Positions 6,226 through 48,495 of a stretch of 64,000 nucleotides of DNA are shown here, one piece after another. Source of the stretch: Octopus sinensis (Eukaryota). Within the stretch, counting starts at the first letter, position 1; every line of letters starts with the position of its first letter. The translations under genes and the position numbers were made by a program. A model generated the notes under the pieces. The model was given only the letters and a program-made list of their open reading frames with translations. It did not search any database and was not told where the DNA came from. The stretch lies in contig NC_043003.1 of NCBI RefSeq assembly GCF_006345805.1, positions 51,646,001-51,710,000 of the forward strand, given 5' to 3'.

Positions 6226-6311
6226 CTAACTGAATTTTGATGTTGGCTTTTTTTTCGGTATGGCTGGCTGTTCTCGTGTTCTTATCACAACATCTTCATA
6301 GGGATTCGATT
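6226..6311 (-). CDS. THEMIS-like: Terminal coding exon of the THEMIS-like gene (E|SNPYEDVVIRTREQPAIPKKKPTSKFS*)
   Basis: Acceptor ctttgtatcttaaatgtctattccag|AA, phase 1 matching the exon 3 donor. 86 nt ending in TAG at 6228-6226. Encodes YEDV and PAIPKK motifs. Too short for the ORF track. Confidence 0.68.
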
Positions 6312-9229
6312 CTGGAATAGACATTTAAGATACAAAGATTAGATTGTGATAAGTTACTGTTATTCCTACAGTAGTGGAGTGAATGCGATCTCCACTAAGA
6401 TGGCTGTGATAATACACAGACACACACACACACGTCTGTGTGTATTTGTTTTCCCCTACCCATCCACTGATTGATGTCACTGTAACTTAACAGTTCAGCA
6501 AAAGAACCAATAAAATATATATCAGGTTTAAAAAAAAAAACAGAAAAAATAGAAGTACTAGGGTCGATTTGTTTAACTAAAACCCTTCAAAGCAGTGCCT
6601 CGACATAGCTGCATTCCAATTACTAAAACAGGGGAAAAGATAAAATGGAAAAGACTACTTATTTAAAATAGTAGGGTGAGGTTTGAAGGGGATTTGGTTT
6701 TTATTTCTAGCAGGTTGAATGAACATCCAGAGACTCTTGTTTTTTCCACTGTAGACATTTTAACAACTGATGCTCAGACGATGACGATGATGATGACGAC
6801 GACTTTAACAACACCAAAAACAATATTATCATGATGTCAATGAGGAAGCTTGTAGTTGGTTGCTTGATCCTCTAGAAATAACAGTAAAAACTGCCTCAAA
6901 CTACACTATCATCTACGCAACAAAGTACAAGATGAAGCATGACTATCATGTTATTAAAACGACATAGATAACTAGATACAGTAAAGTATACTTTATATGT
7001 GGCTTACTAATCAGGCGCCATTGCTGGAACAGTGACTTGCATCAAATACTTTATTAAAATGATTGGTTAAATAAAACAAGTATACTAACATTTGAAGGGA
7101 AATAACTCAATATATTACACTGACAAAGCCATGCTTAAAATTTCACTCCACAATTATCACGAAAAACTTGTGTATCATATGGCTTCATTGTTATCACACC
7201 GAAAGGATAAAAGGCAAAGTCGACCGCGACGGAATTTGAACTCAGAACGTAACGGCAGATGAAATACCTATTTCTTTACTACTCCCAAGGGGCTAAATAC
7301 AGAGGGAACAAACAAGGACAGACAAACGGATTAAGTCGATTATATCGACCCCAATGCGTAACTGGTACTTATTTAATCGACCTCGAAAGGATGAAAGGCA
7401 AAGTCGACTTTGGTGGAATTTGAACTCAGAATGTAGCGGCAGACGAAATACTGCTAAGCATTTCGACCGGCGTGCTAACGATTCTGCCAGCTCACCGCCT
7501 CAGCAGATGTACTGACACAAGTAATATAGACCTTTTAATGCTGTAACACATCAACTACACAAAAAACATAACTGTAGTGGCTCCTGAAGCAGTATCATCT
7601 TGAAAAATCTTCACCAAAACCAAAAGAAAGAAAATGTGAAAAGAATTTTGGATTCAGAAATACGAAGAACCAAGCCTAACACACATCCATATTTAACACT
7701 TCCAATGCTTTAATGGTCCCTGAGTGAGTAGGTTTCATTCTGTTGCTAGCATTTGAACCAGAATGCAGTTATCTTTCTGCTTGTTTCTCTGGCTGAGGTT
7801 CAGGATGATCATCAGACACATAAATTTCACCTGACAGGGAGGTGGGGATGAAAAGGACATAAGTATCGCACTTACTCCTCTCACCCATGCTAGCATAGGA
7901 GATGGACGTTAGACGATGATAACGATGAAAACCAGCTAAAATATACAAAAATCTTTATTTGTAGTTATGTACTCTAAAAGCTACATTAGCTTAAAGCAGT
8001 TATCTCCCTCTAGTCATCAAGCCAGATACTTGCAAGAAAGACAACTCTTGACTTGGTAAGAAATCGCCATTATGAAATTACAGCGATATTTGGAAGCTCA
8101 GTTTAACCGGCTAAGTGTTCATAACTCTACGAACTCACCTCCAATGATTCCTGTTTAATCTACCCTAACATTCTTCCCTCCAGAATCATCAGCAGTCGAC
8201 CTAGAACCAGCGACGTTGTTTTAACAGAATTGTCAGAGTATTGGGCAAAATATTTGTTGAATTTAGCTCCGACCCATAACATTCTTATTTCACATCACAA
8301 TAAAGTCAACTCTGCCTTTCATCCTTTCCAAAGTCAATAATATAAAATACCAGTAAAATTATGGATGTAATAGCAGGTGATGTAGTATGTTGTAGTGCAG
8401 TGCAGCGGTGGTAAAGATGGTGGTGATGATAGTGATCTTACAGACCAGACAGATTAAACGACACCTACCCGCCATTCTCAAAAGAATATGGGTGAGTATT
8501 GTTGTAACCAACAGGGCTGAGAGAGACTATCTCCAGGGAGGATTCTGCAAACTGTTCTACATGTACTTAAAAAAAATATAGGATAGTCATAGTTGGAATG
8601 ACTATCCTATAGGTCAACTAAATAGTTAATTAGTTGACCACATCAAAAACAGCACTAAACAATTTTCCAATCATTCCTTGCTAGAACTGCAGCCATCAAA
8701 AGCTACTTTCTGCCTACATCCTCCTCCTCCTCCTCCTTCTTCTAAGCTAATAAAGGTGCCCTTGCAGCTGTTCAACCTGTGGGGAACAGTTACCAAAAGT
8801 CATTCAAATCACTCCCTGGCATCTTAAAAAAGGCAAGGACACTTAGGTATTTATAAAAGATAGGATGATCGTTGGTGGAAAGTGTTTGATCATAGACCTG
8901 CACATTTGGAATTTACTTCAGGAAAAATAAAAACAAAAGCAATATCAACCTTCAGAATTACAAGCAAATTATCACTTGTATTGACATAAACTCAATTAGC
9001 ATTGTCCATTTGAAAGGTCATATAAAGATTATGTGCATTGCCTCTGTTATCTTAATTAAATAACTGAGAAAAAAATTGTTAAAGAAATGACTTGCTCTAT
9101 CACTTGCTCTATCATACAACCAGTAGTATGAGACATGTAACTAAGTAGTAATAATATGCAGTTAAACAGCACTACCATTTAACTAAATTGTAGGTACGTA
9201 TGTACCTATATACATACATATATACATAC

Positions 9230-9279
<50 letters not shown>

Positions 9280-9987
9280 GCACGCACACACATATAATAC
9301 ATACATACACACATACACATACATACATACATACATACATACATTTAACTAGTACTACAACACAACTAGCCAGTATTGTATATAACTTATCAATATTAAT
9401 TTAATTAATATAACTAATCAATACTGCCATACAAGTATCCAGTTCTACAATTCATCTTTCTTTTAATGACAACAAATTAATCAATACAAATTAACACACA
9501 TTCTTTTGACTCTAAGCGACAAAACATTTTCATTTATTTTATGCTGGTTGCTGGAGAGTTTCAGTAATCTGAGTGCTGCATAAGGAATTTACTGAATATA
9601 ATTAATTAGTACTCTAACTTGTATTATTATACAATTAATCAGTATCACCAAGTAATTAACTCGTGTTACTGTATAAACTATCTAGTTCAGTTTGACCATT
9701 ACTATTATATAAGTAACTGTGTACTATGCAACTAACTGGTTCCTCTTCTCCTTCCTCCTCATTGTTTTAATGTCCAGTTTTCTATGCTTGCATACATTTG
9801 GATGGCATTTGCTGAAGTGGATTTTTTGATGGCCAAATGCCTCTCCTGTCACTAAATATTGCCTTAGATTTCAAGTACAGTAAAACTTGCTAATGATCAG
9901 GCATGTTTCCAAAGAAGAATGGAAACAGACATCGCCTGCATGATGGTAACACTCATTTACAACTAGTCAAAATGAAAACAAAGAGAG

Positions 9988-10026
<39 letters not shown>

Positions 10027-12399
10027 ACAGGCTTCTTTCAGATTCCATCTACTAAATCCACTCACAAGGCTTTGATCAGCCCAGGACTATAGTACTTGCT
10101 CAAGGTGTTATGCAGTGGAACTGATCCTGAAACCATGTGATTGGGAAGCAAACTTCTTATCACACAGCCATGCCTGCACTTGTTCATCATCATCATCATC
10201 ATCATCATAATCATCATTTAACGTCCATTGTCCATGCTGGCATGGGTTGGACAGTTTGACTGAGCTAGCATGCTGGAAGGCTGCACCAGACTCCAGTCTG
10301 ATTTGGCATGGTCTTCTATGGCTGGATGCCCTTCCTAACACCAACCACTCCAAAAGTGTAATGGGTGCTTTTACATTCCACTGGCACAAGTGCCATTTGT
10401 GTGACACCAATATAAAAGAGATTTCCGGTACAAGAGAAGGTATTTCCAGTATCAGTGGTGGGCGTGGGAAAGGGTGGGTACATCGCATCACTATATGATT
10501 AAATTGTACAGTAATGCTAATATACCACTAACTATACCATACAATTAACAAGTATTGTATAAATTCAAAGATCAAAGGCTCTTCTCAAGCCATAGGCTCA
10601 TAAGGCTAGTTTTCCAGTTTCTGTGGTGTGCATATCCACTCCCACTGGATGGGATGCCAGTCCATCATAGATACTGCTCAATACTGTCAGCTGAATGGAC
10701 TGGAGCAATATGAAATGAAATGTTTTGCTCAAGAACACAATGCATTGCCTGATCTAAGAATTGAGACCACAAGCATTTGATCATAAGTGCAACACTTTAA
10801 CCACTAGGCCAAGTGCTTCCACCACTGTATAACTTAGCAGTACTAATATAACATACTACTATAAATTAACCAGTACTATATAGTTATATATATAAATAAC
10901 CAGTACTATATAAATAGTCAAGGTAAGTGCTTCTATGTGGCCACTCAACTTGCTAGGAATAGAAACCTAAACTAATGTAGGAATAAACAACAGAAGCTAA
11001 CCAAAAACTAATATAATTGTACTTTAGTACTTCATTTGATTAGAAGTCTAACTCTTAATAAACTTGAACTGAAAACAGTAAAGTACAGGCCAAAACAGAA
11101 GGGTAAAGAAATACTGATTGGCGTAAGTTGTTAGTTATTGGGACACTACACAGGTCTCCTACCCTGTTAGAGGCATAGGGGTTTACATTTCTTGTAAATC
11201 ATTCTAGTTATTTTAGTCTATCCTGTTGTTTGTGAGTGTATCATACACATGTATATAAACACATAACTCATACATACATCATACTTATTTAGCAATGATT
11301 ACGAAAATACTTAAAGGTTAAAAGGTAAAGACCCCCTTTCAGTGATGAATGACCTTGGGATAGAGCCAAGAAAGTTCCCCTCTAATCCACACTTGTGGGC
11401 AAGGTTGTTTATGGAAGACCAGCAGTTGCTCATGTATACCAGCCTCGCCTTTCCATGTTATCAAAGGGAAGAGCAAAGGCTGATACAGCTTGGCACCAGT
11501 GACATCATAATTCATTTCTATAAATGAGAGAACTGGAACAACATGAAAATAAAATGTCTTGCTCAATAATACAACACACAGCCCAGTCCAGGAATCGAAC
11601 ATGCTACCTCATGATTGAAAGCCCAATGCTCAAACCACTGAGCCAGGTACCTTCTAAAATAATTAAAGAGTAATTTAGTTTGAGTTTATCACCAGCTGAA
11701 TTGAAGTCCAGGTTTCACATTAGGCTAGAGCCTCTTATCAGTTTTACATGGATGGATATACAGATGTTTAGCCCAAGGTCAGTTTTAAGCTGTTCCAGGA
11801 GTGACTTTCCAGAATTTTTTTTTCTTTTCATTCATAGAGTGTCTAGGATCACATTGCACCTTTCCATTTCTAAGACATCTGTGTGTGAGATGACAGAGGT
11901 TAGGTTGCTATTTCTAGCAGGTCTGGAAACTACATAGTGGCTCACTTGTTGGATCTTATGTGAATGTTTGTAGGTGACAGGTGGTCGTTATAGCAGCAGC
12001 AGTAACAGGAAAAGCCTCACAAGTGGTGATGGTGGAAGTGCTTGTAATTAAAAGTATTACTAAGGAGTGGTAGTGGTAATAGTGAAAGTATTGCTAGTGA
12101 CAGTGGTATTAGTGTAGAAGCAGCGATTGTGTAGTAACATTATTAGTTGTTAGTGGTAGTTTTAGTAAAAGTATTTCTGTTGTTGGTAGTAGTAGTGATG
12201 AAAGAGGTATGATGTACTCATAGCATTATTGTTGATGATAGTAGTAGAAGCAGCAGCAGTGGCAGCAGTAATAGTGGTGGGGAGAATTTGCAAAAACTGT
12301 ATGCCTGGATCCTCACCTAGCCATGGGGTTTAGGTGACAGGTGAAGCAACACACCTGTTGAAATATAATACTGTTATATCAATATTATCTAGTGTAAGG

Positions 12400-13060
12400 T
12401 GGCAAGCTGGTACAAACGTTAGCATGCTGGGCGAAATGCTCAGTGGTATTTCGTCTGCCGTTACGTTCTGAGTTCAAATTCCACTGAGGTCAACTTTGCC
12501 TTTCATCCTTTTGGGATCGATTAAATAAGTACCAGTTATGTACTAGGGTCGATATAATCGACTTAATCCCTTTGTCTTTCCTTGTTTGTCCCCTCTGTGT
12601 GTAGCCCCTTGTGGGCAGTAAAGAAATAGGTATTTCATCTGTTGTTACATTCTGAATTCAAATTCTGCTGAGGTTGACTTTGCCTTTCATCCTTTCGGGG
12701 TCGATAAATTAAGTACCAGTTGCATACTGGAGTCAATCTAATTAACTGCTCCCCTCCCACTCCCCAAAAGTTTCGGACCTTGTGCCTAGAGTAGCAAAGA
12801 ATGTTATCTATTTGTATCACTCTTTCACTGGTTTCAAATTTTGGCACAAGACTAGCAATTTCCGGTGAGGGGAGGGGCACAGGTAAATCGATAACATTGA
12901 CACCCCAGTACTCAGTTGGTACTCATTTTATTGGACCTCGAAAGGATGAAAAGTAAAGTCGACCTTGGCAAAATTTGAACTCAGAACTTAAAGATGGATG
13001 AAATGCTGCTGAACGTTTTGCCAGCGTGCTAATGATTCTGCCAGCTTGTCACCTTGTGCC
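12400..13060. mobile_element. Cluster of SINE family D copies in both orientations (others approx. 4220-4440, 7200-7500, 23340-23580, 43620-43860, 45900-46300)
   Basis: Shared gttctgagttcaaattc(c/t)gc(c/t)gaggtcgactttgcctttcatcctttcggggtcgat, with a B-box-like gttcaaattcc. Confidence 0.8.
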
Positions 13061-13238
13061 ACACACATGTACAGCCTATCAATAATTTTCACACACACAC
13101 ACACTCTCTCTCTCACTCTCTCTTTCTCTCTCTCTCTCTTACCCCCTCTCTCTCTCTCTAAAAACAGACCTCATTTAAAGGGATAGCACAAAAGAAAAAG
13201 TAGCATGTAGGCAGCAGCAGCAGCTTTAGTTTGCTTAC

Positions 13239-13487
13239 CTGTATCAGAAATCTGGCCAGATGATGTCCTTGTGATGTAGACATTTGGCTGTGTGGTGGAA
13301 GTCCTGTTTGAAAGGGAAGGATAGTCACCAGTTGGTGTTGTTGATGCATTTGATGCAGTAGCTGGTGTAGTAGTGGATGTAGTAGTTGATGTAGTTGGAA
13401 TAGGAGTTGGTGCAGAAATTGATGCAGTAGTTAGCATTGGAGTTGTTAAAAGATTGTCGATTCTGATATTTTCATAAATGTTGAAAT
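13239..13487 (-). CDS. THEMIS-like: Coding exon 3 of the THEMIS-like gene (D|FNIYENIRIDNLLTTPML...Thr/Ser-rich...QPNVYITRTSSGQISDT)
   Basis: Acceptor tttttgttttttgttttag|AT and donor CAG|GTAAGC are both strong. The 249 nt run phase 1 to phase 1, compatible with exon 2, and the frame is open. Confidence 0.78.
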
Positions 13488-13680
13488 CTAAAACAAAAAA
13501 CAAAAAAATAATAATAAAATAAAATAGAAAGAATATTCAGTAAGCAAGTGAGTAGGGCAGAGGTCATTGAAGGCCTTTTAGGAAGATTAGTGTATGTATG
13601 GTACACTACAGAGCAAACAATATTTTGGCAGATTTTTCATAAAGGGCAAAAAATATATATCCTATTCTATTATTCTATTA

Positions 13681-13994
13681 CAGGGGTTGGCCACCTTTTT
13701 GAGAGAATGTGCCAAAAGTGGCAAAATCTCTGACACAAAATTCATCCATGTGCCAAGTAAGTTTTTTTGAGAACATATTAGGCTACCTGATATCTCTTAA
13801 GAAAGTGTATCTCTTTTACTTGTTTTAGTCATTTGACTGTGGCCATGCTGGAGCACTGCCTTTAGTTGAGGAAATCGACCCTAGGACTTATTCTTTGTAA
13901 GCCTAGTACTTATTCTATCGGTCTCTTTTGCCAAACATAAACACACCAGCATCGGTTGTCAAGCGATGTTAGGGTGACAAACACAAACATACAA

Positions 13995-14027
<33 letters not shown>

Positions 14028-15750
14028 CATATATATGATGCGCTTCTTTCAGTTTCCGTATACTAAATCCACTCACAAGGCTTTGGTCAGCCTGAGGCTA
14101 TAGTAGAAGGCACTTGCCCAAGGTGCCACACAGTGGGAGTGAACCTGGAACCATGTGGTTGGTAAGCAAGCTACTTACCACACAGCCACTCCTATGCCTA
14201 TATGTATGTATGTTAAGAACTTTTTTAATAAATGATAAAAAAATCACCATGGAGTAGTAAAACATTATATAATGATGGGAAATGTATTTATTCACCTTCA
14301 AAGTTACATCAAAACAACAATGAACCTTTACTACTTTCAAAAGAAAACATCCAATAAAATATCAGTCCAGCAGAAAAGTTGCAGACAGCCTTTGCCACTT
14401 TCAAAAGAAAATATCAGTCAGATGAAATACCAGTTTGACAGAACACTTGCTGACTGCTTTCGATATACATGTATGTACATACAGTATTATCAGTGGGACT
14501 TCTGATGCTGCATCACTGATAACAGAGATTTTGTATCAGGTTTATACTTTGTAACCTTCAGAGATATGCATGCACTACTAGTTTCATCTGTCAGGTTACT
14601 TCTATTATAAGACTTAATATAGTTCATCACTGAGAACAAGGATTCACAGGTATACGTTGATGAAAACATGGATATTAGTGCTGTTGCAAAGTTTTTTAAA
14701 CTGGAAAAATTTTCTGGAATGGCATTCCGAGTCCTTAATAATTTGTTTTCCACGCTCTTCTCTGGTACTCCAGTCTCTAATCACTTTTTTTCAATATTTT
14801 CTAAGTCAACTCTAAGGTCAATAAACTTTTGCTTCCAAACTGAGCTACTTTGAAATTCAATCAACTGCATTTCAATATCAACCATGTCTATCCATGAAAA
14901 CATTTGTAATTCTTCCAGTTTGATAATGTTTGGAAACTTCATGAATTTTGCTGTCTCTTCCAGTTCCCCGAATTTAGCAAACCTTGTAAAAAACTGCTCA
15001 ATAGTTGACTCGATAATGTTTACAAACAGGTTTTGAAGACACTGGCACTCTGTTCTGTCATCTTTTGAGAGAGCACTGATGTACCTCTTTATGTTTGGGA
15101 AGTATCTAAATCTCTCATTGTTCACATCCCTCTTAAAAGCTTCTAGTTTCATTTCAAAAGCCTTTATGTAACCAAACATAACATCAAGTGTCGTACCAGA
15201 GCCCTGTAATTTAACATTCAAGTCATTCAAATGGTCATAAAAATCTGAAAAAAACCCACCAGTTTACAAATCCACATGATGTCAGACAATTCTTGATAAG
15301 AAACATGCTGGCTATTCAAAAAGAGCTTTATCTCATTTAAGCATTCAACAAACCGTTTCAGAACCAAACCTCAGCTAAGCCGTCGATCATTGTTGTACAT
15401 TTTCAATCCTTTATACACAGATTCTACCTCATTCTGCAAGAAAACAGCATAATGATGATGTCACTGCTGTAGCACACATCGAGAGAAATTTTGAATAAGT
15501 AGGTGAGGTGGTTGTCTTGTCAACGAATACCAGTTGCGGAGGCTGAAACCAAAACACTGATTCGGTCTGGGAGGGGATCATTAAATAAAGGTAGGTCTAA
15601 TTTGCAATTTAAAATGTATCTGAGCAATAAAAAGTCGCTATATATCATTAAGAGAAAGTCATTAAATGGAGGGAGAGAGGGTTTCGCATGCTAGAAACAA
15701 ATTATTGGAGTGCCATGTTTGGCACGCATGCCAGGGTGTGTCCACCTCAG
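13681..15750 (-). mobile_element. Internally deleted hAT transposon (Charlie/SPIN/GTF2IRD2-type transposase relic)
   Basis: ORFs 14781-15230 (MNDLNVKLQG..FEMKLEAF) and 14490-14753 (SMFSSTYTCESLFSVMNYIKS..RSNLTD, the hAT dimerization region). Ends caggggttggccacct and gtgtccacctcag. Exact 8-bp TSD TTCTATTA at 13673-13680 and 15751-15758. SINEs are nested at about 13810-14200. Confidence 0.88.
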
Positions 15751-15964
15751 TTCTATTACTTGTTTCAGTCATTTGACTGTGGCCATTTTGGAGCACCACC
15801 TTGAAGAGTTTTGATTCCAGGACGTTTTTTAAGCCTAGTACTTATTCTAATGGCCTTATATGCTGAACCACTAATTTATGGGGATGTAAATATACCAACA
15901 CCAGTTGTCAAGTAGCGATGGGGGACAAACACAGACACAAATACGCATACATAAATATAAATAT

Positions 15965-15995
<31 letters not shown>

Positions 15996-19376: not shown

Positions 19377-19437
<61 letters not shown>

Positions 19438-25204: not shown

Positions 25205-25262
<58 letters not shown>

Positions 25263-25472: not shown

Positions 25473-25515
<43 letters not shown>

Positions 25516-26982: not shown

Positions 26983-27500
26983 TATATATGTCCACTCCTC
27001 TCTGGATTGTGCCTTTCTCATCCATGTGATCCCAATAGTCCCCCTGAAATCGTAACTCCACCGTCGTGGAGGCCTTCCAGGTGGTCGTTTCCGCTCTGCA
27101 GGTACCACTTGACAACTGCACGGGTCCATCGATTATCGGTGAGCTGGGCGACACGTCCAGCCCATCTAAACTTGCTGCGTGTATACTCTACGATGACATC
27201 CCTCATGCTGGACTTCGTTCTGATAATCTCGCTACTGATGTGCTCTCTCAACGAGATACCAAGCATTGACCTCTGCATGGCTCTTTGAGCCATTACCAGT
27301 CTCTGCTCTTCTCTCTTTGTTGTAGCCCATGTTTCCCAACCATATAACATAGCAGGTAGAACTGTACTGTTGAGGTTGGTGTGGGTGGTCCTGTCCAACC
27401 TTACCTTGAGCACATCCCTTATGCCATTAAATGCCTTCCATCCGACCCTTACTCTCTGTGGGATCTCCTTTTCGATATCTCAGTACATATTCACTTCTGT
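26983..27500 (-). mobile_element. 5'-truncated RTE-clade LINE fragment
   Basis: STVLPAMLYGWETWATTKREEQRL..QRAM.RSMLGISLREHI, KFRWAGRVA...DNRWT, and RKRPPGRPPRRW in an adjacent frame, typical of the RTE RT C-terminus. Confidence 0.85.
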
Positions 27501-33485: not shown

Positions 33486-34199
33486 GGTGGTGCCCCAACA
33501 TGGCCACAATCCAATGACTGAAACAAGTGAAAGAAAAAAACATGAAAGAATATATAACAAACACTTTGAATAATTTTAACTATCAAAAGGCAGTGTCTGA
33601 TATGCTAATAATTATTATGTCAAGTTGTTGAATAATGACTTCTAAAATTGGTGAAAAGTGAAATGTTTTAAAGAAGGAGTACAGTTAAATAAACTCCAGC
33701 ACTTGGTTTTAAACCAGATGATGGATAAAATCTAATATACACAAGTAGACCACAGTGGGATTTGAACTCAGAATGTAAAGAACTGGAAATGAATACCCCC
33801 AAAACATCCTGTCCAAGGCTCTCATGATTATATCAGTTTTAGACAGGTACTATATTTATCGAACCTGAAAAGGAAAATTCACCTTGAGAGGATTTGAATT
33901 AAGAATGCATGAAGTCACAATAGGTACAAAAAGGCATTGTGTTTGATGATCTGATAAGTGTGTGTGTGTGTGTGAAAATTGACTAGAATAAATCTTGTGA
34001 TGAAGAAAGAATGAAAAATAAGAAGAATGAAAAATCGAGAGAAAGAGAATCTGTAATAAGATGGAGAAAGAATAAAAAGAAAGGTAGAAAAAAAGCAGGA
34101 ATCAGAAGAAGGGGAAGGGTTAAAAAGTAGAGGAAGAAGTCCTTACAATAAATCAACAACAGCACCATGCTCAACTTGATTAAATAGTCTTCACATCAC

Positions 34200-34750
34200 A
34201 CAATACTGTATCTATCAATGAAGGATAGATTTGATAATGTAGTCCTACAAGTAAAGAGAGGAAAGGATGGTGATGATGGGGGTCATTTTTGACTCGAGGT
34301 AAAACATCAACATCAAAGTTATAACATTAGGACTGAGAAGTAAAGATCCTTTGCCAGGGGAGGTTTACTGATCAATGGTTGAGTTTATATTTATAAAGTA
34401 GTTAAGGGTGATGTCAATGGCACTAAAACGCTATAGTGGAGAGAAAAGTCAAGATTTTATTGTGAAACGTATTGGGTACACTGAGTACAGATGAGTTGAG
34501 ATACGAAGAAAGGCATTAAAGCAATCAGCCACAGTATGCTAGAAAGAAAGCTGTGCTGATGCATATGAAGGATGATGTTTGGATCAGGAAAGTTAAGTGA
34601 TCCATGGAGAATGAACATATGGAAGAATAAGAATGCAAAAGATATTGGAAGATATGGTGAAGGCTGATCTTAAGATGCTGGCTTTCATGAAATGACCTGG
34701 GAATGTATCGAGTGGTGAAACAACAAGATGAAGTAGACCGGTCTAAACAT
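34200..34750 (+). mobile_element. Highly decayed RTE-type LINE 3' remnant
   Basis: Residual ..EDMVKADLKML.. type C-terminal motif with many stops. Confidence 0.4.
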
Positions 34751-35779: not shown

Positions 35780-36500
35780 GGGATCATCTATGTATGAGTT
35801 CTAGAGGTGTCATATAAGAAAAGAATTCAACCAAGAAGTTTGTATATCACATTTCCTTAAACACCTTTTCTAATATTAAGTGCAACAGTCTTGGTTCAAT
35901 GTCAAGTCCATTTTGAGAGAGCCAGGTCACCCAGAGACATTGGCCTTTGGGAGATATTGATGTTGGTCACTAAGGAGAAGAGAATCAAAGTGTTAAGAAA
36001 CACTCTTCAATGACAGTTTTCTTTTTCAGCTTTAGAAACATTGAAAGGAGGGAAATGAAGTGAATGTTAGTGCTGAGAGGAGCAAAGAGGGATGAAGGAT
36101 GAAGCTACATACTTCTATGTTTTCAAATAGGTGGTTCTGAGTGAGAGAGAGGCAGAGAGAGATCTAGATGGCATGGTTTCAAATTTAAATAGGAACATGT
36201 GCTAGTTCAAAATCACATAGTTTGAAGGTAAAGGCGTGGAATGCCTTCAGGGTTTGTGGATATAGTAGTGTTGGAAGTGGAGCATATTTTAGATATAACA
36301 ACAGGAGATTGTGGAAAGTAGAACTTTCATATGCACTAAAAAGGTAAGTTGAAAGGATTTGGAGGAGTGAGAATAGAACTGGGATGCAAAGCAGATAGGG
36401 AGAAAATGCAATAAAAGGCATTAGACTATGACCAAAGTAATACTTTGTTAGAAGTTAGACTGTAACAACAGGACAGCAAGTGTAGTAGTAGATGCCTATA
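35780..36500 (-). mobile_element. Highly decayed CR1/L2-like RT remnant
   Basis: Only residual similarity to the LDISKAFD-VWH region on the minus strand, with many stops. Confidence 0.3.
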
Positions 36501-36624
36501 GAGTTTGTTGACATTTTGTTGACAGATAGAACTGGAAAGAGAGAAAGGAAAGAGAAATGAGATACTTGAGCAGTAACAAGATTAAAAATATAAAGAAGAC
36601 ACAAGAAAGTTAGTAAAATTTCAT

Positions 36625-38409: not shown

Positions 38410-38745
38410 GAGACCCCCTTTGGTCATGACTGGCCATGGGATTGCACCTAGAAAGTTACCCTCCCAGGTACAAGTCCGGGCAAGGTTGTTTAGGGAAGAC
38501 CAACAGTTGCTCATGCATGCCAGCCTCCCCTCTCCATGACATTAGTGTTATCCAAGGAAAAGGCAAAGGCTGATATAGCTTGGCACCTGTGACGTCGCTA
38601 CTCATTTCTACAGCTGAGTGAACTGGAGCAACGTGAAATAAAGTGTCTTGCTCAAGAACACAACACGCAGCCCGGTCTTGGATTCTAACTCACAACCTCA
38701 CGATTGTAAGCTCGACGCTCTAACCACTGAGCCATGCGCCTTCAC
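38410..38745 (-). mobile_element. Near full-length tRNA-derived SINE; related copies at about 10590-10820 and 11325-11655
   Basis: Minus-strand head gtgaaggcgcatggctcagtggttagagcgtcgagcttacaatcgtgaggttgtgagttagaatcc has pol III A and B boxes, followed by a body shared with the other copies. Confidence 0.75.
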
Positions 38746-41232: not shown

Positions 41233-41283
<51 letters not shown>

Positions 41284-42302
41284 GTACATATAAGTTAATT
41301 AGAGGATATATTAACCTCTTAAAGGGATGATTACATCCAATAAAATGCTGGTTCTATGCCTAATATTTTGGGGTAATAAAATTTCCCTACATCAATAGGT
41401 ATATATTAAGCATATAATCAGTAATCAATTGACAGAAAAAAAAGAAAATGGAGGGTTGAAAGTTAATAATTATTTATTTATATATTGATAATTCTTACTT
41501 CCTACAGCTGTTTCCATTTGCGCTCATTAAATAAATTACAAATTTATACTTTAAATTTGCATTTATAAGATATGAGCAAAATATCAAGAAAAAAGATAAA
41601 TATTAAAAGATTACATGTTGACTTCTTAGTTCATACCAGTAGACTGATGATATTTTGCTCATATCTTATAAATGCAAATTTAAAGCATAAATTTATAATT
41701 TATAATGGAAATAGCTATAAGAAGAAAGAATTATCAATTTATTAATAAATAATTATTAACTTTCAACTTTCCATTTTCTTTTCTTCTAATAATTGAATAC
41801 TGATTATGTATATCTACATTAGCTGGCCCTGTACCATAAAAAAATGATGGCTAATTGGCATATTTTATATATAAATAAGGATGGTAAATCAAATTAATAC
41901 ACTTGTCAATGTTATCTAGTGGTTGTCTTTTGAGATGTAACAACAATCATCGTTTGTTACTGAAAGAATGCTGATTCACACATACAAACATTCACATACT
42001 TCCCTTGTACATGCACATACATACACACATATACTCACTTGAAGTTTAAACACTGTTTGATGTTTTTTTTTCAGCATTGAATGTTCATCATCCCAATTCC
42101 ATTGCTTGCATGCACGCGTGCAAACACACACACAAACATTCACATACCTCCGTTTTACATACACACATACATATTCTCACAGAGTTAAAACGCTTCCACT
42201 ACCAGCTTGCCATCATCCCTTCCTTCTTTATTCATCTATCACCCCTTCCCTTCTTGTTCATTCATATGTTGTGATGGAGAAAAACACAAGGGTATTATTA
42301 TA

Positions 42303-42338
<36 letters not shown>

Positions 42339-42339
42339 G

Positions 42340-42580
42340 TGATACCTGTGCTGGTGGCACGTAAAAAGCACCATCCAAACGTGGCCACTGCCAGCCTCGT
42401 CTGGCATATAAAAAGCACCCACTACACTCACGGAGTGGTTGGCGTTAGGAAGAGCATCCAGCTGTAGAAACACTGCCAGATCAGACTGGAGCCTGGTGCA
42501 GCCTCCCGGCTTCCCAGACCCCGGTTGAACCGTCCAACCCATGCTAGCACGGAAAACGGACATTAAATGATGATGATGAT
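42340..42580 (-). mobile_element. Representative of abundant SINE-like family A (other copies approx. 1320-1548, 4790-4900, 5970-6115, 10190-10400, 19075-19340, 26330-26570, 26680-26930, 29300-29720, 47170-47325, 47760-48210, 63610-63800)
   Basis: Shared text (cat)n-ttaacgtccgttttccatgctagcatgggttggacgg...ggatgcccttcctaacgccaaccactcc. It generates many spurious MLAWVG.. and MGWTV.. ORFs. Confidence 0.85.
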
Positions 42581-42889
42581 GATATATATATATGTATACC
42601 AACATATACGTGTGTGTATGTGCATGCATGGGTGTATTTGTGTCTCTTTGTTTTGACACTGTGTACTAGTTATAAACAAATGTCACTATTTTACAAGCAG
42701 TACCATTTATTTCTTATCTTTCTGAAAACATATCTAGCCATGAGGAAATATTACCTTGCTTGGAAACAGGTAAGGGTTGGTGACAGGAAGGGCATCCAGT
42801 CATAGAAAATCTGTCTCAGTGGCTTCTGTCCTGTTCATGCAGGCATGGAAAAGTGAATGTTAAAATGATGATGATGATGATGAATAGCC

Positions 42890-43060
42890 CTTTCAGGGAT
42901 AATTTTCTCCAAGCCAATTTCTGGGTAAAACTGTCTACTTTTCTTATGACCTTGTTCCAGTTGCTTTCCACTGGCAAGTCTGACACAAACAAAATTCCCA
43001 TACATTTTGACAAGGGTATCAGTCCTGTGACCCACAATGTTAACTGGCATAAATTAATTA
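42890..43060 (-). mobile_element. L1/Tx1-clade RT fragment
   Basis: MGILFVSDLPVESNWNKVIRKVDSFTQKLAWRKLSLKG resembles the Tx1/L1 LG.F....NW..V..K.....W..R.LSL.G segment. Confidence 0.6.
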
Positions 43061-43870
43061 GCCTTCCTGGATGTTACGCTACAAGCCCACCAAACTGTAC
43101 TTTAATAAAGTACTACTCATAACTGACCTCCTAGCTGAAACTTCTTAAAACTCTGTGATATTCATGTGAAACTTCACCTGTTTTAAAAAAATGACATGGT
43201 AAAGATACAAAAGAAATTCAGCAAACACACTACTAGATGACACATAATAAGCCAGATATGTCAGGTGAACAATACATAAATAATCAATATAGCAATACTA
43301 GATAACTATGATTTAGGGTTGAAATAAGCAGAAAAGCCAAGGAATTTCACTGACTTAATTACTGAATTAAAAACATCACAGCAGTTATGATACATTTTCA
43401 TGCTTCCATTTATATTTGATGTGATTGGAATGATGCACAAGCACTTCAGTCAAAACATTCAGAGATTGCAATAATCTCAATATAATAACAATACCAAGGT
43501 CTGCAAATATTGTTGAGGGATTCTCATATGGTATTTGTCAACCTTGAATAATTCTTAGAATGTGTTCTAAAATGTACTTAATTCTTTTTGATGTAAGAAA
43601 GAAAACACTTGATGAATTATTGAAGTCAATGGTCATAATATTGGTTTTAAATTTTGGTACAAGGCCAGCAATTTGGGGGAAGGGGTTAAGTTGATTACAC
43701 TGACCCCAGTACTCAACTGGTAATCGTTTTATATGTCCCAAAAGGATGAAAGGCAAAGCTGACTTTGGCAGAATTTGAACTCAGAATGTAAAGCTGCAAA
43801 GCATTCTGAAGAAATGCCACTAAGCACTTTGCCTGGTACAGTAACGCTTCTGCTAACTCACTGTCTTGAA

Positions 43871-43905
<35 letters not shown>

Positions 43906-43931
43906 ATAATAATAATAATAATAATAATAAT

Positions 43932-45350
43932 TAAAAAAAAATGGTGACAAGTAGAGAAAAGCTTGTCAGGACAGAAGGTACATGGTTGCCATGTGGTGAA
44001 ATGATGAAGGCAATTCAACCCTAATCCAGCCATAAATATTAGAAGTAGATGGAATTAAGCACAATGACATGAAGAAAAAGATTAAAAGAGTGTACCTGCA
44101 GTGAATGAGAAAAATATTGGCTTCAAAGATGAATACTAGAAACATAAATTCAGTGATAAACTCACACGCAGTCACAGCAGTTCGGTATGGTGCTGGAATC
44201 AAGAAGTGGACCAAGGAAGAGCTAAAGGAGATGGCTCCTAAAGATGCATTGAGCCCATCATCTACATCCAGATACTAATCACCTATACATGAAGAGAGCG
44301 AATGGAGGAAGAGGACTGATAAGTGTGGAACTCTGCATACGTGTCAAACTTGAGAGTTTAATGAGATACCAAGCCCAAAATAAGGAAACCTTGCTAGTGT
44401 CAGTTAGGAACGAGGGAGTATTGAAAGCAGAGAAAAAAGGTAAAACAAAAGAAAAAGTGCAAAAAGCACATGAAGAAGAATTACGCAACAAGGGACTACA
44501 CTATCAATTTCATGTAGCCACAACAGAAGTTACTGGAAAAAATAGGTGGGATTGACTGAAGAAATGAACATTAAAAAAGAGACCAAGAGCATTATACTGG
44601 CAGTGCAAGACCAAGCTTTGGCCACAAACTAGAGGGTCAACCTTTGGAATGAGCAAGTGTCTCTGCTGTTTCACATCTGTAATAGGGTGGATGAAACCAT
44701 TGCCCATATCACGAACAAGTGCCCTAGATTTGCCCCAAACCACTATAAGTCATGGCAACATGATCAGGTAGCAAAAGTGTTACATTGGAAACTGTGCAAA
44801 AAGGAGAGGCTAGAGAGAGGCAAGACATGGTATGAGTACAAACCGCAGAGAGTGGTGGAGTTGGAGACTAGCAAAATCCTCTGGGATTTCCCAATCCAAA
44901 TACATCAGGTGCTATAGCATTAACTGACTAGACCTAGTGGTGGTTGATAAGATGTTCCACATGTGCTATATAGCTGATGTTGCATGTCCCTTTGACCCAT
45001 GAATAGTCAAGAATGAAGGTGAAAAAATCGATAAATACAATCCTCTTAAGTACGAAATAGCCTGGCTATGGAAAATGAAGAAGGTGAAGATAGTGCCAAT
45101 TATTGTTGGGACTTTGGAGACAATATCAGAAGATATCAAGAGGAATATAAAGGAAATTGAAATAGAGTGCCCAGTAGAACTGTTACAAAAGGTTTGCCTC
45201 TTTGGCATGGTCAGAATAATCATGAAAGTATTAGATAGCTAAAAAGAACAGATACCATGGTACCTAAGCTACAAGTAGAAAGCCCACTAAACATGCAAGA
45301 CTCCAGGAGTTCCAACAAAACCTGTGATAAAAAGAAACGATAATAATAAT
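43932..45350 (+). mobile_element. 5'-truncated R4/Dong-like non-LTR retrotransposon (RT C-terminus, CCHC finger, REL endonuclease), decayed
   Basis: Motifs GGRGLISVE, C..CNRVDETIAHITNKCP, HDQVAKVLHWKLC, KILWDFPIQ, DVACPFD, EKIDKYNPLKYEIA.LW, VPIIVGTL. Flanked by (TAA)n on both sides. Confidence 0.85.
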
Positions 45351-47295
45351 AAATGCCCTGGTGCAGTACCAGGCACTGGCTCTCATGGCTTCTGATCTTA
45401 ATTGATAGCAAGTGTTATTATGTACATGTTTTGTTTTAGTATAAAAAAGATGGGCTACAGCAAATATTGTACTCAATACCACAGATTTGCTTGTCAGTTG
45501 CTTGATCTTAACCAGTTGAGCATGTCCCTTAGTGGCTGACAATATGTGCATCTTTGACCATGAGCAGAAGTAGTGGGGGAGCATCATAGCCATATGTTGA
45601 GAGGAATTTGGTGGGGTTTGAATAATTCACCTTTGAAAGTATGAGTGTTTTATTCCATATCTTTAAACAACCCTTATTCAGGAACCTTTTGAGCAGGATG
45701 GGCTACTGCAAGATCATGCACAGTTTATCTTGATGTAAAATCACCATGTCGTGCACATATGGTTGTGATGCATGTGCCTGGTGTACTCTTATAAGACTGT
45801 AGTCATGATGGGTATATAGGGCTTCATATATTTATACTCCAGTGTCACTTTGATGGCATGTACTGTTCTCTCAATAATAATAATAATAATCCTTTCTACT
45901 GTAGGCACAAACCCTAAAATTTTGGCAGAGAGGGCTATTTGATTATATCGACCCCAAGTACTTAATGTACTTTATTGACCCTGATAGGATGAAAGGCAAA
46001 GTTGACCTCAGCATAATTTGAACTCAGAAATAAAGACATCAGAAAGGCTACTAAGCATTTTGTCTGGAGCAGAAACTGATTCTACCATCCCATTACCTTA
46101 ACAGTAATAAAAATGATAGTTTCTGATTGAGGTACAAGGCCAGCAATTTTGAGGGAGGTGGTTAGTTGATACCATCAATCCCCATATCAAACAGGAACTT
46201 TATTCTATCAACCCTGAAAGGATGGAAGGCAAAGTTAACCTTGGCAGGATTTGAAGTCCGATTGTAAAAGTATACTTCTAAATACGTCTAGGCATTTTAT
46301 ATGATACTGGAATAACTCTGCCAAACTAATAATTTCTAAAAAAGGCACAAAGTTACAAACTTTGGGAGAAGTCATAGTGAATTAAAATGACCTTGTGCTT
46401 GCCTGCTACTTAGTTTTATTGAAGATAGCAAAATCTGGACTAAGAATATAAGGAAACATAACTAAATATTACAAGACATTAGTCTGTCATCCTACGAATC
46501 AGCTAATCCATGGCCCTTTATGCTAATAATAATTTTTACTTTTTGGCTACAAGGGCTTAGGAAGTTCAAGGATGAAATACAAAAGCAGTGGAGGACTCAC
46601 ATCAAGTAATAGAGTGAAATCAATAACATAAAGAACAGTAAAACAAGAAAGAACCTTGAAATGGCTGACAACTATATTTGGGGTACTCCACACAAAACTC
46701 CAGATTATTTCAAATGTCAAAAGCAAAACTTTTTCCTGGTTCATGCCACAGCCTGAGTAGTCCCATTTAATCACATCAATTTCACCACTCTCCCTCGTTT
46801 TTCATAAAATTTACTAGAGACCACACCATCCATTCAACTTTTACTTTCCTCTGCAAACTTCAAGTGGTACTTGATGTGAACTTGACTTGAAGGTAAGAAC
46901 TTTGTTCTCTAACCTTTCAAAGTACATTCATGACACAACTCCCTTTGCCAATACCCTCAGGCACAAGAAGACATCAACACTCCCTTCCTTGCCAAAATAA
47001 GGCAGTTGTTTGATCTTCACAATAAACTTGTTTGATAGCCAGATCAGTCCTAAATATAATAACAACTGCACAAAAATCTAAATAATAATATTTCTAAACC
47101 ATATTCTTTTATTCTTTTACTTGTTTCAATCTTCTGACTGAAACCATGCTGGAGCACCACCTTTACATGAACATAGGAAGGGCATCCAGCTGTAGAAACA
47201 CTGCCAAATCAGACTGGAGCCTGGTGCAGCCTCCATGGCTTACCAGACCCCGGTCGAACCGTCCAACCCATGCTAGCATGGAGAACGGACGTTAA

Positions 47296-47327
<32 letters not shown>

Positions 47328-48313
47328 ATCGACCCCAGGACTTTGTAAGCCTAGTACTTATTCAATTGGTCTCTTTTTCCAAACCACTAAGTTTCAGGGA
47401 CGTAAACACACCATCATCGGTTGTGAAGTGATGGTGGGGGACAAACATGGACACACAAACACACACACATGTAGGCTTCTTTCAGTTTCTATCTACCAAA
47501 TCCACTCACAAGGCTTTGGTTGGCCCGAGGCTATAGTAGAAGACACTTGCCCAAGATGCCACACAGTAGGACTGAACCTAGAGCCATATGGTTGATAAGC
47601 AAGCTACTTACCACACAGCCATGCCTGCGCTTGTGATTGCAAATTTTGTGAGAGAGTATAGTCAATTATCTCAACCTCAGTACTTAACTATATTTTATTT
47701 TATTGACTTTTTTATTTTATTTTATTGATTTTATTTGAAATCAAATTCTATGATTGACATCTGTGCTAGTGGAGCACTAAGAGCTCCATCCGAGCGTGAT
47801 CATTTGCCAGAGCAACTGACTAGCTTCTGTGCTGGTGGCACATAAAAAGCACAATTCGAGCGTGATCATTACCAGCGTCGGTTTACTGGCACTTGTGCCG
47901 GTGTCACGTGAAAGAACATTTGAGCGAGGTCATTACTAGTGCCGCTGGACTAGCTCCTGTGCAGGTGGCACATAAAAAACACCATTTGAGCGTGGTTTTT
48001 GCCAGTACCACCTGACTGGCCCTTGTGCCAGTGACACGTAAAAGCACCTATACACTCTCGGAGTGGTTGGCGTTAGGAAGGGCATCCAGCTGTAGAAACT
48101 CTGCCAGATCAGATTGGAGCCTGGTGCAGCCATCTGGTTCACCAGTCCTCAGTCAAATCGTCCAATCCATGCTAGCATGGAAAGTGGACGGTTAAACGAT
48201 GATGATGATGATGACTCTGGAATGAAGAAATGCAAAATTGACCTCAGTGGGATTTGAACTCTAAATGAAAATAACAACATAAAAAAGTGTTTTTTTTTTA
48301 TCTTGGAGCATAC

Positions 48314-48495
48314 CTGATTCAGCCCTCCTGACCTCTGATCTTATAAGACCCTGTGATGGATATTTTTTCTTGCGCATCCGTGAAAAGCTTTTCCGCAATT
48401 TGTTTGCTTTATTGACGCTGAATGTTGATAAAGATCTCCTCATGTTGGACAGCTGTGGTACTATATTCAAATCGCGTCTCCATACAGATCTTGAA
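48314..48495 (-). CDS. THEMIS-like: Coding exon 2 of the THEMIS-like gene (S|SRSVWRRDLNIVPQLSNMRRSLSTFSVNKANKLRKSFSRMRKKKYPSQGLIRSEVRRAES)
   Basis: Acceptor gttattgttgtctacag|T and donor CAG|GTATGC. The 182 nt run phase 2 to phase 1, which fits the phase-2 donor of exon 1. The frame is open and the sequence is non-repetitive, with several CpGs. Confidence 0.78.

What the first reader, a model, noticed from the sequence alone, without database searches (positions are those of the whole stretch)
6226..48495. Three distant exons add a pTyr/proline docking tail, predicting a complete invertebrate THEMIS-GRB2-phosphatase-type module
Seen: exons 48495-48314, 13487-13239 and 6311-6226 have canonical splice sites, and their phases chain exactly (2, 1, 1) to give 2463 nt, or 820 aa plus stop. 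The tail carries a basic NLS-like patch (KLRKSFSRMRKKK), IYENI, and C-terminal NPYEDV followed by QPAIPKKK. Established: pY-x-N binds the GRB2 SH2 domain; PxxPxK/R binds SH3 domains; vertebrate THEMIS uses a PPPRPPK tail and C-terminal tyrosines to recruit GRB2 and SHP phosphatases. Inference: this protein keeps the same logic with different sequence, coupling a tyrosine kinase receptor to GRB2/SHP2-type partners.
Basis: partly seen in the sequence, partly recalled or inferred. Interest (0 to 1): 0.75.

Follow-up and report, generated by a model that had tools for sequence, protein, structure and literature searches.

The report
Octopus THEMIS-family gene's spliced tail

Summary
The window holds Octopus sinensis gene LOC115214407 on the minus strand. 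All three claimed exons are real. The end is wrong: exon 4 stops at 6231 (donor GTTAGT), and a fifth exon (2987-2944) adds KNPFKFLKKFSKRS. The five-exon CDS (2502 nt) translates exactly to XP_029639462.1 (833 aa, not 820). Two alternative last exons (36531-36455, 34244-34180) give annotated isoforms without the tail.

The protein has two CABIT domains colinear with vertebrate THEMIS (PDB THEMIS chains E~1e-24; hhalign 98.6%), then a predicted disordered tail.

Across molluscs the tail keeps:
- a basic K/R-R-x-S patch;
- two acidic YEx[V/I/L/Y] tyrosine motifs, each far above chance;
- in gastropods, a C-terminal PxPPPKPR motif resembling the THEMIS PPPRPPK.

The GRB2-type YxN is found only in octopods, at chance frequency. 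PAIPKK is lost in O. bimaculoides (PVITKK). No proline motif follows CABIT2, and the two arginines essential for THEMIS-GRB2 binding are E and T here. Neither tyrosine fits an ITIM/SHP2 consensus.

The conserved tyrosines most resemble THEMIS2 Y660 (YEEI), which binds a Src-family SH2 domain.

Verdict: the gene structure is correct and already annotated. "Docking tail" is plausible. "Complete GRB2-phosphatase module" is over-stated.

The parts
54111..56056 (-). Coding exon 1 (ATG at 56056; 1946 nt; aa 1-649). It encodes both CABIT domains. The CABIT1 core motif LQCQHQDGRIMELPWSCKGDF lies at 55540-55478. The conserved CABIT2 Cys487 (VLRCEKL) lies at 54607-54587. The C-terminal helix EETYFYMETY lies at 54196-54167.
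   Evidence: ORF and GT donor at 54110. Pfam CABIT 70.1 bits against a cut-off of 24, two stretches. Colinear with PDB THEMIS chains, E~1e-24. Core motif found by regex.
48314..48495 (-). Coding exon 2 (182 nt, enters in phase 2; aa 649-710). It holds the conserved RSVWRxDxNIVPQL segment and the basic Ser-containing patch NKANKLRKSFSRMRKKK (48413-48363).
   Evidence: Splice sites. Identical in XP_029639462.1. Conserved in Argonauta. The basic K/R-R-x-S patch aligns with bivalve, gastropod and chiton homologues.
36455..36531 (-). Alternative last coding exon of isoform X2 (VLSVNKMSTNSIGIYYYTCCPVVTV, stop TAA). It is joined after 48314 and gives a 734-aa protein without the Tyr/Pro tail.
   Evidence: The translation reproduces XP_036360655.1 exactly. 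The same 25 aa occur in O. bimaculoides isoform X2.
34180..34244 (-). Alternative last coding exon of isoform X3 (GLHYQIYPSLIDTVLCDVKTI, stop TAA). It gives a 730-aa tail-less protein.
   Evidence: The translation reproduces XP_036360656.1 exactly.
13239..13487 (-). Coding exon 3 (249 nt, phase 1 to 1, a multiple of 3; aa 710-793). It opens with (D)FNIYENI (48314|13487-13465). It then has a Thr/Ser/Pro-rich tract (13431-13327) and YPSLSNRTSTTQPNVY (13323-13276).
   Evidence: Splice sites. DFNIYEN is identical in O. sinensis, O. vulgaris, O. bimaculoides and Argonauta. The T/S/P tract is largely absent from Argonauta and overlaps a 12-nt imperfect tandem repeat.
6231..6311 (-). Coding exon 4 (81 nt, phase 1 to 1, a multiple of 3; aa 793-820). 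It opens with (E)SNPYEDVVI (13239|6311-6283), followed by QPAIPKKKP (6270-6244). It ends at a GTTAGT donor.
   Evidence: SNPYEDV aligns with the mollusc-wide EEN[LIF]YE[DE]V motif.
2944..2987 (-). It completes KFKNPFKFLKKFSKRS, with stop TGA at 2946-2944. The last 27 aa have 10 K/R, no acidic residue and 6 hydrophobic residues (5 Phe and 1 Leu).
   Evidence: Found by six-frame search for the C-terminus of XP_029639462.1; acceptor ttttcag|AG. KFKNPFKF[LF]KKF is conserved in Argonauta and O. bimaculoides.

Best explanation
This is the 3' part of an already annotated gene, Octopus sinensis LOC115214407, a mollusc member of the THEMIS/CABIT family.

Shown:
- One large exon encodes two tandem CABIT domains.
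- Four small exons spread over 51 kb (introns of 5.6, 34.8, 6.9 and 3.2 kb) encode a roughly 190-aa tail.
- Two alternative terminal exons give annotated isoforms that lack the tail.
- AlphaFold2 models the tail at low confidence, so it is predicted to be disordered.

Inferred: the tail is a string of short linear motifs that works as a regulated docking and localisation module.
(a) Two acidic tyrosine motifs, FNIYENI (Y714) and SNPYEDV (Y797), each open their own in-frame exon. They belong to a mollusc-wide pair of YEx[V/I/L/Y] sites. Their context (acidic upstream residues, I/L or P at -1, E at +1, hydrophobic at +3) fits phosphorylation by a Src-type kinase and binding of a Src-family-type SH2 domain, as at THEMIS2 Y660 (YEEI). 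In octopods the first site also has N at +2, so it could additionally take the GRB2/Drk SH2 domain.
(b) The basic KLRKSFSRMRKKK patch corresponds to a conserved K/R-R-x-S site. It is most likely a basophilic-kinase site, a 14-3-3 site or an NLS-type switch.
(c) A weak PxxPK motif is a degenerate relative of the gastropod C-terminal PxPPPKPR motif.
(d) The polybasic, Phe-rich C-terminus may hold the protein at acidic membranes.

By homology only, the CABIT pair would be the part that acts on SHP-type phosphatases.
For: Gene model: the five-exon CDS equals XP_029639462.1 exactly, and X2 and X3 are reproduced exactly. The same tail is present in O. vulgaris, O. bimaculoides and Argonauta.

Family: Pfam CABIT 70.1 bits. 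The mollusc profile hits PDB THEMIS chains 9uou_B, 9i3p_B and 9iaz_B at E~1e-24 over both CABITs. hhalign to a vertebrate THEMIS-like protein carrying PPPRPPK gives 98.6%, E 7.8e-16, 495 columns. The CABIT1 core motif matches and THEMIS C413 corresponds to C487.

Disorder: pLDDT is below 50 for residues 636-833.

Motif conservation: YEx[VILY] occurs twice in 10 of the 12 complete mollusc tails (three times in one, once in Aplysia), against 0.04-0.2 expected. HMM alignment puts octopus SNPYEDVVI in register with chiton ENLYEDVII, Aplysia DNLYEDVEI, Physella ENFYEDVEI and Lottia ENLYEYVDV. The basic patch aligns with KRFSRS, RRLSRAL and RRFSKAL.

Literature: THEMIS2 Y660 in YEEI is phosphorylated and needed for Lyn binding, and PPPRPPK is needed for Grb2 binding (PMC2903609).
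Against: No phosphorylation, binding or expression data exist for this protein. I saw no transcript reads, so the splice junctions rest on NCBI models and cross-species conservation. The tail of decapodiform cephalopods could not be recovered, so conservation within cephalopods covers octopods only. The proximal mollusc YED motif sits directly after CABIT2, whereas octopod YENI sits after the basic patch, so their homology is uncertain. SH2 specificity cannot be read reliably from four residues. The membrane-anchor and 14-3-3/NLS readings are inference from composition alone.
Confidence: 0.55

Rival explanations
1. One reading: the tail rebuilds the vertebrate THEMIS logic in full. pY714 (YENI) binds the GRB2 SH2 domain, PAIPKKK binds a GRB2 SH3 domain, and the C-terminal tyrosine recruits an SHP2-type phosphatase. 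Together these couple a receptor tyrosine kinase to GRB2 and SHP2.
For: YENI is identical in four octopods. From my own knowledge, it resembles a bona fide GRB2 SH2 site (FAK Y925, YENV). PAIPKK fits the class II PxΦPx+ pattern in O. sinensis. Gastropod relatives end in PxPPPKPR or RPPRPPPKPR, close to the THEMIS PPPRPPK. All four human CABIT proteins are reported to work with GRB2 and SHP phosphatases (bioRxiv 10.1101/2024.10.01.616165).
Against: YxN is absent from all non-octopod tails except one non-homologous bivalve site, and it occurs at chance frequency. PxxP is lost in O. bimaculoides. There is no PRS after CABIT2, and the GRB2 hotspots R544/R545 are E628/T629. The THEMIS PRS peptide alone shows no detectable GRB2 binding (PMC13381594). 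There is no ITIM-type site in the tail. SHP-1 binds the THEMIS CABITs and GRB2, not THEMIS phosphotyrosines (PMC9250082).
Confidence: 0.2
2. The tail is mainly a serine-phosphorylation-controlled localisation device: an NLS or 14-3-3 switch at KLRKSFSRMRKKK, plus a polybasic, Phe-rich membrane anchor at the C-terminus. The tyrosine motifs play no docking role.
For: The basic K/R-R-x-S patch and a basic C-terminus recur in molluscs. The last 27 aa have 10 K/R, no acidic residue and 5 Phe. GAREM1 localisation is controlled by an NLS and 14-3-3 binding (PMC8093981). THEMIS has an NLS (PMC9250082).
Against: The YEx[VILY] pair is the most strongly enriched and best aligned feature of the mollusc tails. 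That is hard to explain if the tyrosines are incidental. The two readings are not exclusive.
Confidence: 0.2
3. The tyrosine motifs are YxxΦ endocytic sorting signals, or chance features of a fast-evolving low-complexity tail.
For: YENI, YEDV and YITR all fit YxxΦ. The individual motifs are not beyond chance within one sequence. Part of exon 3 is a lineage-specific T/S/P expansion.
Against: No signal peptide or membrane span is evident in the sequence read by eye, and no predictor was run, so AP-2 sorting signals would have no obvious context. The motifs lie in islands conserved from octopods to chitons, while the flanks diverge.
Confidence: 0.05

Closest known systems
THEMIS2 (ICB1), vertebrate
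   Same: Two tandem CABIT domains followed by a tail. The tail combines a Pro/Lys SH3-type motif with an acidic YE-x-hydrophobic tyrosine near the C-terminus. In THEMIS2 these are PPPRPPK, which binds Grb2, and Y660 in YEEI, which binds the Lyn SH2 domain (PMC2903609).
   Different: In THEMIS2 the order is PRS then tyrosine. In octopus it is tyrosines then PxxPK. The octopus proline motif is degenerate and is not conserved within the genus. The octopus protein has two YEx[VI] sites, a basic RKSFS patch and a polybasic end, and its tail is alternatively spliced. Sequence identity in the CABITs is only about 24-27%.
THEMIS (THEMIS1), vertebrate; PDB 9i3p, 9iaz, 9uou
   Same: Colinear CABIT1 and CABIT2 (E~1e-24). 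The conserved CABIT2 cysteine is kept (C413 to C487). Y540 is kept (Y624). The C-terminal helix EE[IL]xEExY..M..Y is recognisable.
   Different: THEMIS holds GRB2 SH3C constitutively. It uses a PxRPxK PRS directly after CABIT2 together with R544/R545 (PMC13381594). The octopus protein has no PRS there and has E628/T629. Y541 is F625. In THEMIS the NLS is central, not in the tail (PMC9250082).
GAREM1/GAREM2 (FAM59A/B)
   Same: CABIT adaptors that combine a proline-rich Grb2 SH3 site with phosphotyrosine sites for Shp2, plus NLS/14-3-3 control of localisation (PMC6852768, PMC8093981).
   Different: GAREM proteins have a single CABIT and usually a C-terminal SAM domain (PMC9250082). The octopus protein has two CABITs and no SAM hit in Pfam. 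No GAREM sequence was available for direct comparison.
Mollusc two-CABIT proteins (Lottia XP_009054732.1, Potamilus KAK3601481.1, Liolophura XP_064605931.1, Aplysia XP_005102966.1, Physella XP_059167082.1, Babylonia XP_076440378.1)
   Same: These are probable orthologues, 23-31% identical. They share the same motif grammar after CABIT2: an acidic YED site, a basic K/R-R-x-S patch, the EEN[LIF]YE[DE]V site, and a basic or proline-rich C-terminus.
   Different: All are uncharacterised. Gastropods have tails of about 460-580 residues with many PxxP motifs. In octopods the first tyrosine motif is YENI and lies after the basic patch.

Membership tests
CABIT-domain (THEMIS/GAREM) superfamily | Match to Pfam PF12736 (CABIT) above the gathering score | tested here: met
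   70.1 bits against a cut-off of 24, E 2.6e-19, two matched stretches.
CABIT-domain (THEMIS/GAREM) superfamily | Core motif φXCX7-26φXLPφX3GXF with the conserved cysteine (as given in PMC9250082) | tested here: met
   CABIT1 LQCQHQDGRIMELPWSCKGDF (aa 173-193) matches exactly. CABIT2 keeps the cysteine (C487, equivalent to THEMIS C413) but has IP in place of LP and lacks GxF.
THEMIS-type (two-CABIT) architecture | Two tandem CABIT domains colinear with THEMIS | tested here: met
   The profile of 24 mollusc proteins matches PDB THEMIS chains. Profile positions 12-194 align with residues 3-190, and 316-603 with 277-549, at E~1e-24. hhalign to the THEMIS-like P0041 gives 98.6% over 495 columns. 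The AF2 model shows two beta-rich domains.
THEMIS-type GRB2 module | Proline-rich sequence PxRPxK (PPPRPPK) directly after the CABIT2 C-terminal helix | tested here: not met
   The residues after the helix are HLRFQSMDCLRDSAQHHM, with no proline motif. The only PxxP in the tail is QPAIPKKKP, about 180 residues downstream.
THEMIS-type GRB2 module | Site-2 hotspot arginines R544/R545, each essential for GRB2 binding (PMC13381594) | tested here: not met
   hmmalign maps R544 to E628 and R545 to T629. They are A/T in Argonauta and E/T in the second cephalopod lineage.
THEMIS-type GRB2 module | LCK-phosphorylated tyrosine pair Y540/Y541 (PMC9250082) | tested here: inconclusive
   Y540 maps to Y624 and is conserved. 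Y541 maps to F625. Phosphorylation itself cannot be tested here.
THEMIS-type GRB2 module | Physical binding of GRB2, and binding or inhibition of SHP-1/SHP-2 by the CABITs | not testable with these tools
   This needs pull-downs or ITC with octopus Drk/GRB2 and Csw/SHP2.
GRB2 SH2 ligand (pYxN) | Asn at +2 of a phosphorylatable tyrosine, conserved in orthologues | tested here: inconclusive
   YENI is conserved in four octopods. It is absent from all other mollusc tails at the homologous sites, and its frequency equals chance.
SHP2 / ITIM-type ligand | [S/I/V/L]xYxx[I/V/L] in the tail | tested here: not met
   The regex finds no ITIM in the tail. Both tail tyrosines have N at -2.
GAREM family | A single CABIT plus a PRS, usually with a C-terminal SAM domain (PMC9250082) | tested here: not met
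   There are two CABIT stretches and no SAM hit in Pfam at E<=1. No GAREM sequence was available for direct comparison.

The most novel reading that the evidence does not exclude
The tail grammar found here is an acidic YEx[V/I] pair, a basophilic K/R-R-x-S patch and a terminal Pro/Lys SH3-type motif. It may be an ancestral, mollusc-wide (perhaps bilaterian) feature of two-CABIT proteins. The vertebrate THEMIS2 pairing of PPPRPPK with Y660-YEEI would then be a rearranged remnant of it. On this reading the THEMIS adaptor logic predates adaptive immunity. In octopods, alternative 3' exons and in-frame phase 1-1 exons, each carrying one tyrosine motif, would let splicing switch the docking sites on or off.
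Probability: 0.3. Interest if true: 0.5.

Novelty: new member of a known kind. Interest (0 to 1): 0.3.

Why it matters
CABIT proteins are known functionally only from vertebrate THEMIS, THEMIS2 and GAREM. A search of the held open literature for CABIT together with Drosophila found nothing on invertebrate members. If the conserved mollusc tail motifs are real phosphotyrosine and SH3 docking sites, the THEMIS-type adaptor design is older than lymphocyte signalling, and molluscs would give a simple setting in which to ask what CABIT domains do. For genome annotation the result is ordinary: the gene model already exists in RefSeq.

Tried and rejected
(1) Tail exons of the second cephalopod lineage (P0003/P0004, 48-52% identical). 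tblastn of the octopod tails against 10 kb downstream of exon 1 in L001 gave only noise. The Logan contigs L002-L006 are genomic, start in a microsatellite and end about 0.8 kb into the intron. The same phase-2 donor after HYLSS is present, but the tail could not be reached.

(2) A profile search of the 5.8-billion-protein database with alignment A2 returned only the four cephalopod proteins already known. It was a wasted search.

(3) A single-sequence PDB search gave only noise, alpha-crystallin at E>0.1. The profile search was needed.

(4) Foldseek of the AF2 model against the PDB library (entries to 2026-04-08) gave no significant hit, only weak SH3-domain matches. The THEMIS entries did not appear among the hits. 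The SH3 hits agree with the published SH3-like CABIT subdomain but prove nothing.

(5) Johnson et al. 2009 (PMC2908989) and Tashiro et al. 2009 (PMC2740447) are not held. Statements on the family come from later papers.

(6) Literature searches for invertebrate CABIT proteins found nothing relevant.

(7) Pfam scans of four intronic ORFs gave no hits.

(8) The reading of the motifs as AP-2 YxxΦ signals was rejected because the protein shows no evident membrane span.


Full report
WHAT IS IN THE SEQUENCE

On the minus strand the window carries a long open exon. It runs from ATG at 56056 to a GT donor after 54111 (1946 nt). Exon 48495-48314 has acceptor ...tctacag and donor gtatgc. Exon 13487-13239 has acceptor ...ttttag and donor gtaagc. 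The third claimed exon starts at 6311 after ...ttccag. The phases 2, 1, 1 are correct.

It is XP_029639462.1, an "uncharacterized protein LOC115214407 isoform X1" of Octopus sinensis. It is 100% identical over the full query except at the extreme end. The real exon ends at 6231, at a GTTAGT donor. A fifth exon, 2987-2944 (acceptor ttttcag), supplies KNPFKFLKKFSKRS and the stop codon.

The five-exon CDS is 2502 nt. It translates residue for residue to XP_029639462.1, and not to the O. vulgaris protein, so the window is from O. sinensis.

Two further annotated isoforms are reproduced exactly from the window. They join 48314 to alternative last exons at 36531-36455 (X2, 734 aa) or 34244-34180 (X3, 730 aa). 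Both lack the whole tyrosine/proline tail.

I saw no transcript reads. The junctions rest on the NCBI models and on conservation of the same tail in O. vulgaris, O. bimaculoides and Argonauta hians.

WHAT THE PROTEIN IS

Pfam finds CABIT (PF12736) at 70.1 bits against a cut-off of 24, in two stretches. An exhaustive phmmer scan of 1.84 billion representative proteins returned only 34 relatives. Every named one is a mollusc: Potamilus, Lottia, Liolophura, Babylonia, Aplysia, Physella, Candidula and Elysia. The unnamed hit P0041 has the sequence features of a vertebrate THEMIS.

A profile of 24 of these proteins matches the solved THEMIS chains 9uou_B, 9i3p_B and 9iaz_B at E~1e-24. The match is colinear over CABIT1 and CABIT2. 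hhalign against P0041, which carries PPPRPPK, gives 98.6% probability over 495 columns. The published CABIT core motif is matched exactly in CABIT1, and the conserved CABIT2 cysteine is kept (THEMIS C413 corresponds to C487) (motif from PMC9250082).

AlphaFold2 models two beta-rich domains up to about residue 639. Residues 636-833 have pLDDT below 50, which predicts a disordered tail. There is no SAM domain. The architecture is therefore of the THEMIS type, not the GAREM type.

THE TAIL, COMPARED ACROSS MOLLUSCS

Among octopods the conserved islands are RSVWRxDxNIVPQL, NKAxKLRKSFSR, AESDFNIYEN, YPSLxNRTSTQPNVY, SDTxSNxYED, QPxxxKxKP and KFKNPFKF[LF]KKF.

In the complete tails of other molluscs the same grammar recurs:
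- An acidic YED[Y/I/V] site lies right after CABIT2.
- A basic patch follows, with K/R-R-x-S (KRFSRS, RRLSRAL, RRFSKAL). In octopus it is KLRKSFSR.
- A second acidic site follows, EEN[L/I/F]YE[D/E]V: chiton LEENLYEDVII, Aplysia AEDNLYEDVEI, Physella EENFYEDVEI, Lottia DDENLYEYVDV. The HMM alignment places octopus TESNPYEDVVI in register with it.
- The C-terminus is basic or proline-rich. In heterobranch gastropods it reads PVPPPKPR, RPPRPPPKPR or APPPIKPR, which is close to the THEMIS PPPRPPK.

Counting confirms the pattern. YEx[VILY] occurs twice in 10 of the 12 complete tails, three times in one and once in Aplysia, against 0.04-0.2 expected. YxN occurs only in the octopods, plus one non-homologous bivalve site, against 0.1-0.8 expected. 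Within the single octopus tail, shuffling produces YxN in 29% of trials, PxxPx[KR] in 18% and both in 5%.

The proline motif is fragile. PAIPKK in O. sinensis and O. vulgaris becomes PVITKK in O. bimaculoides and PLAPKQ in Argonauta.

COMPARISON WITH THE VERTEBRATE MECHANISM

The 2026 cryo-EM study shows that THEMIS engulfs the C-terminal SH3 domain of GRB2. It does so with a PxRPxK sequence placed directly after the last CABIT2 helix, together with both CABIT domains. The PRS peptide alone shows no detectable binding. R544A or R545A alone abolishes binding (PMC13381594, section 8).

hmmalign maps R544 and R545 to E628 and T629 in octopus. No proline motif follows the helix. The constitutive THEMIS-GRB2 arrangement is therefore not conserved here. 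THEMIS Y540 is kept (Y624) and Y541 is F625.

SHP-1 is bound by the CABIT modules themselves and bridged by GRB2. It is not recruited by THEMIS phosphotyrosines (PMC9250082). Neither tail tyrosine fits an ITIM, since N is at -2 in both.

The closest documented parallel to the conserved mollusc tyrosine motif is THEMIS2. Its Y660 lies in a C-terminal YEEI motif, is inducibly phosphorylated and is required for binding the Src-family kinase Lyn. Its PPPRPPK is required for Grb2 binding (PMC2903609).

From my own knowledge, I/L at -1 with acidic residues upstream suits Src-type kinases. pY-E-x-[I/V] is the classic Src-family or Fes SH2 preference. YENV at FAK Y925 is a genuine GRB2 SH2 site, so octopod YENI is compatible with GRB2/Drk as well.

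MOST LIKELY MECHANISM

Shown:
- The gene structure.
- The two-CABIT THEMIS-type fold assignment.
- The conserved motif grammar.
- The existence of annotated tail-less isoforms.

Predicted: the disordered tail.

Inferred:
- The tail is a regulated docking and localisation module.
- Y714 and Y797 are phosphorylated by a Src-type kinase and bind SH2 proteins. A Src-family SH2 domain is the most likely partner. GRB2/Drk is possible at Y714 in octopods.
- The RKSFS/RKKK patch is a basophilic-kinase, 14-3-3 or NLS switch, comparable with the NLS/14-3-3 control of GAREM1 (PMC8093981).
- The Phe-rich polybasic end (10 K/R, no acidic residue and 5 Phe in the last 27 aa) may bind acidic membranes.
- Alternative 3' exons remove the module.
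- Any action on SHP-type phosphatases would come from the CABIT pair, by homology only.

NOVELTY

The gene model is already in RefSeq, and UniProt labels the orthologues "CABIT domain-containing protein". It is published that CABIT proteins are metazoan-wide and commonly carry a proline-rich sequence (PMC9250082). What this analysis adds is the mollusc-wide tail grammar and its likeness to THEMIS2. It is a new member of a known kind, of modest interest.

Noticed in passing
window 36531-36455 and 34244-34180 (minus strand): Two alternative last coding exons lie inside the 34.8-kb intron. They give the annotated isoforms X2 and X3, which lack the Tyr/Pro tail. The 25-aa X2 ending VLSVNKMSTNSIGIYYYTCCPVVTV is identical in O. 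bimaculoides.
   Followed up: yes
window 13487-13239 and 6311-6231 (minus strand): Exons 3 (249 nt) and 4 (81 nt) are both phase 1-1 and multiples of three. Each begins with its tyrosine motif (FNIYENI, SNPYEDV), so either could be skipped in frame. No skipped isoform is annotated.
   Followed up: partly
window 13431-13327 (minus strand), repeat at 13352-13395: The Thr/Ser/Pro-rich tract TTASISAPTPIPTTSTTTSTTTPATASNASTTPTG overlaps a 12-nt imperfect tandem repeat (3.7 copies). It is largely absent from Argonauta, so it looks like a lineage-specific low-complexity expansion.
   Followed up: partly
Similar TA/CA-rich simple repeats occur throughout the window, for example at 64000-63750.
   Followed up: no
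window 61602-62576 (+), 27018-27413 (-), 14781-15230 (-): ORFs of 131-184 aa lie upstream of the gene and in its introns, and they look like decayed mobile-element genes. One carries a CX2CX4H zinc-knuckle-like CFYCGNTGH. None has a Pfam hit at E<=0.01.
   Followed up: partly
L001 12100-12160 and L002-L006: A second cephalopod lineage (48-52% identical, organism not named) has the same phase-2 donor just after HYLSS at the end of exon 1. The exon 1/intron 1 boundary is therefore conserved. An RVT_1 ORF lies about 7 kb upstream in L001.
   Followed up: partly
P0050 (773 aa, Logan, organism unknown): A more distant CABIT protein also combines RPPKP-type proline motifs (SRPPKPS, ARPPKPKS) with acidic tyrosines (EYDDEDYLTMP, DDDGYEEIDE). 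This hints that the PRS plus YEEI-type pairing recurs across the superfamily.
   Followed up: no
P0033 (Elysia marginata GFR84281.1): One mollusc homologue is already named 'protein THEMIS' by its depositor. All the other named ones are 'uncharacterized', 'hypothetical protein', 'unnamed protein product' or 'CABIT domain-containing'.
   Followed up: no
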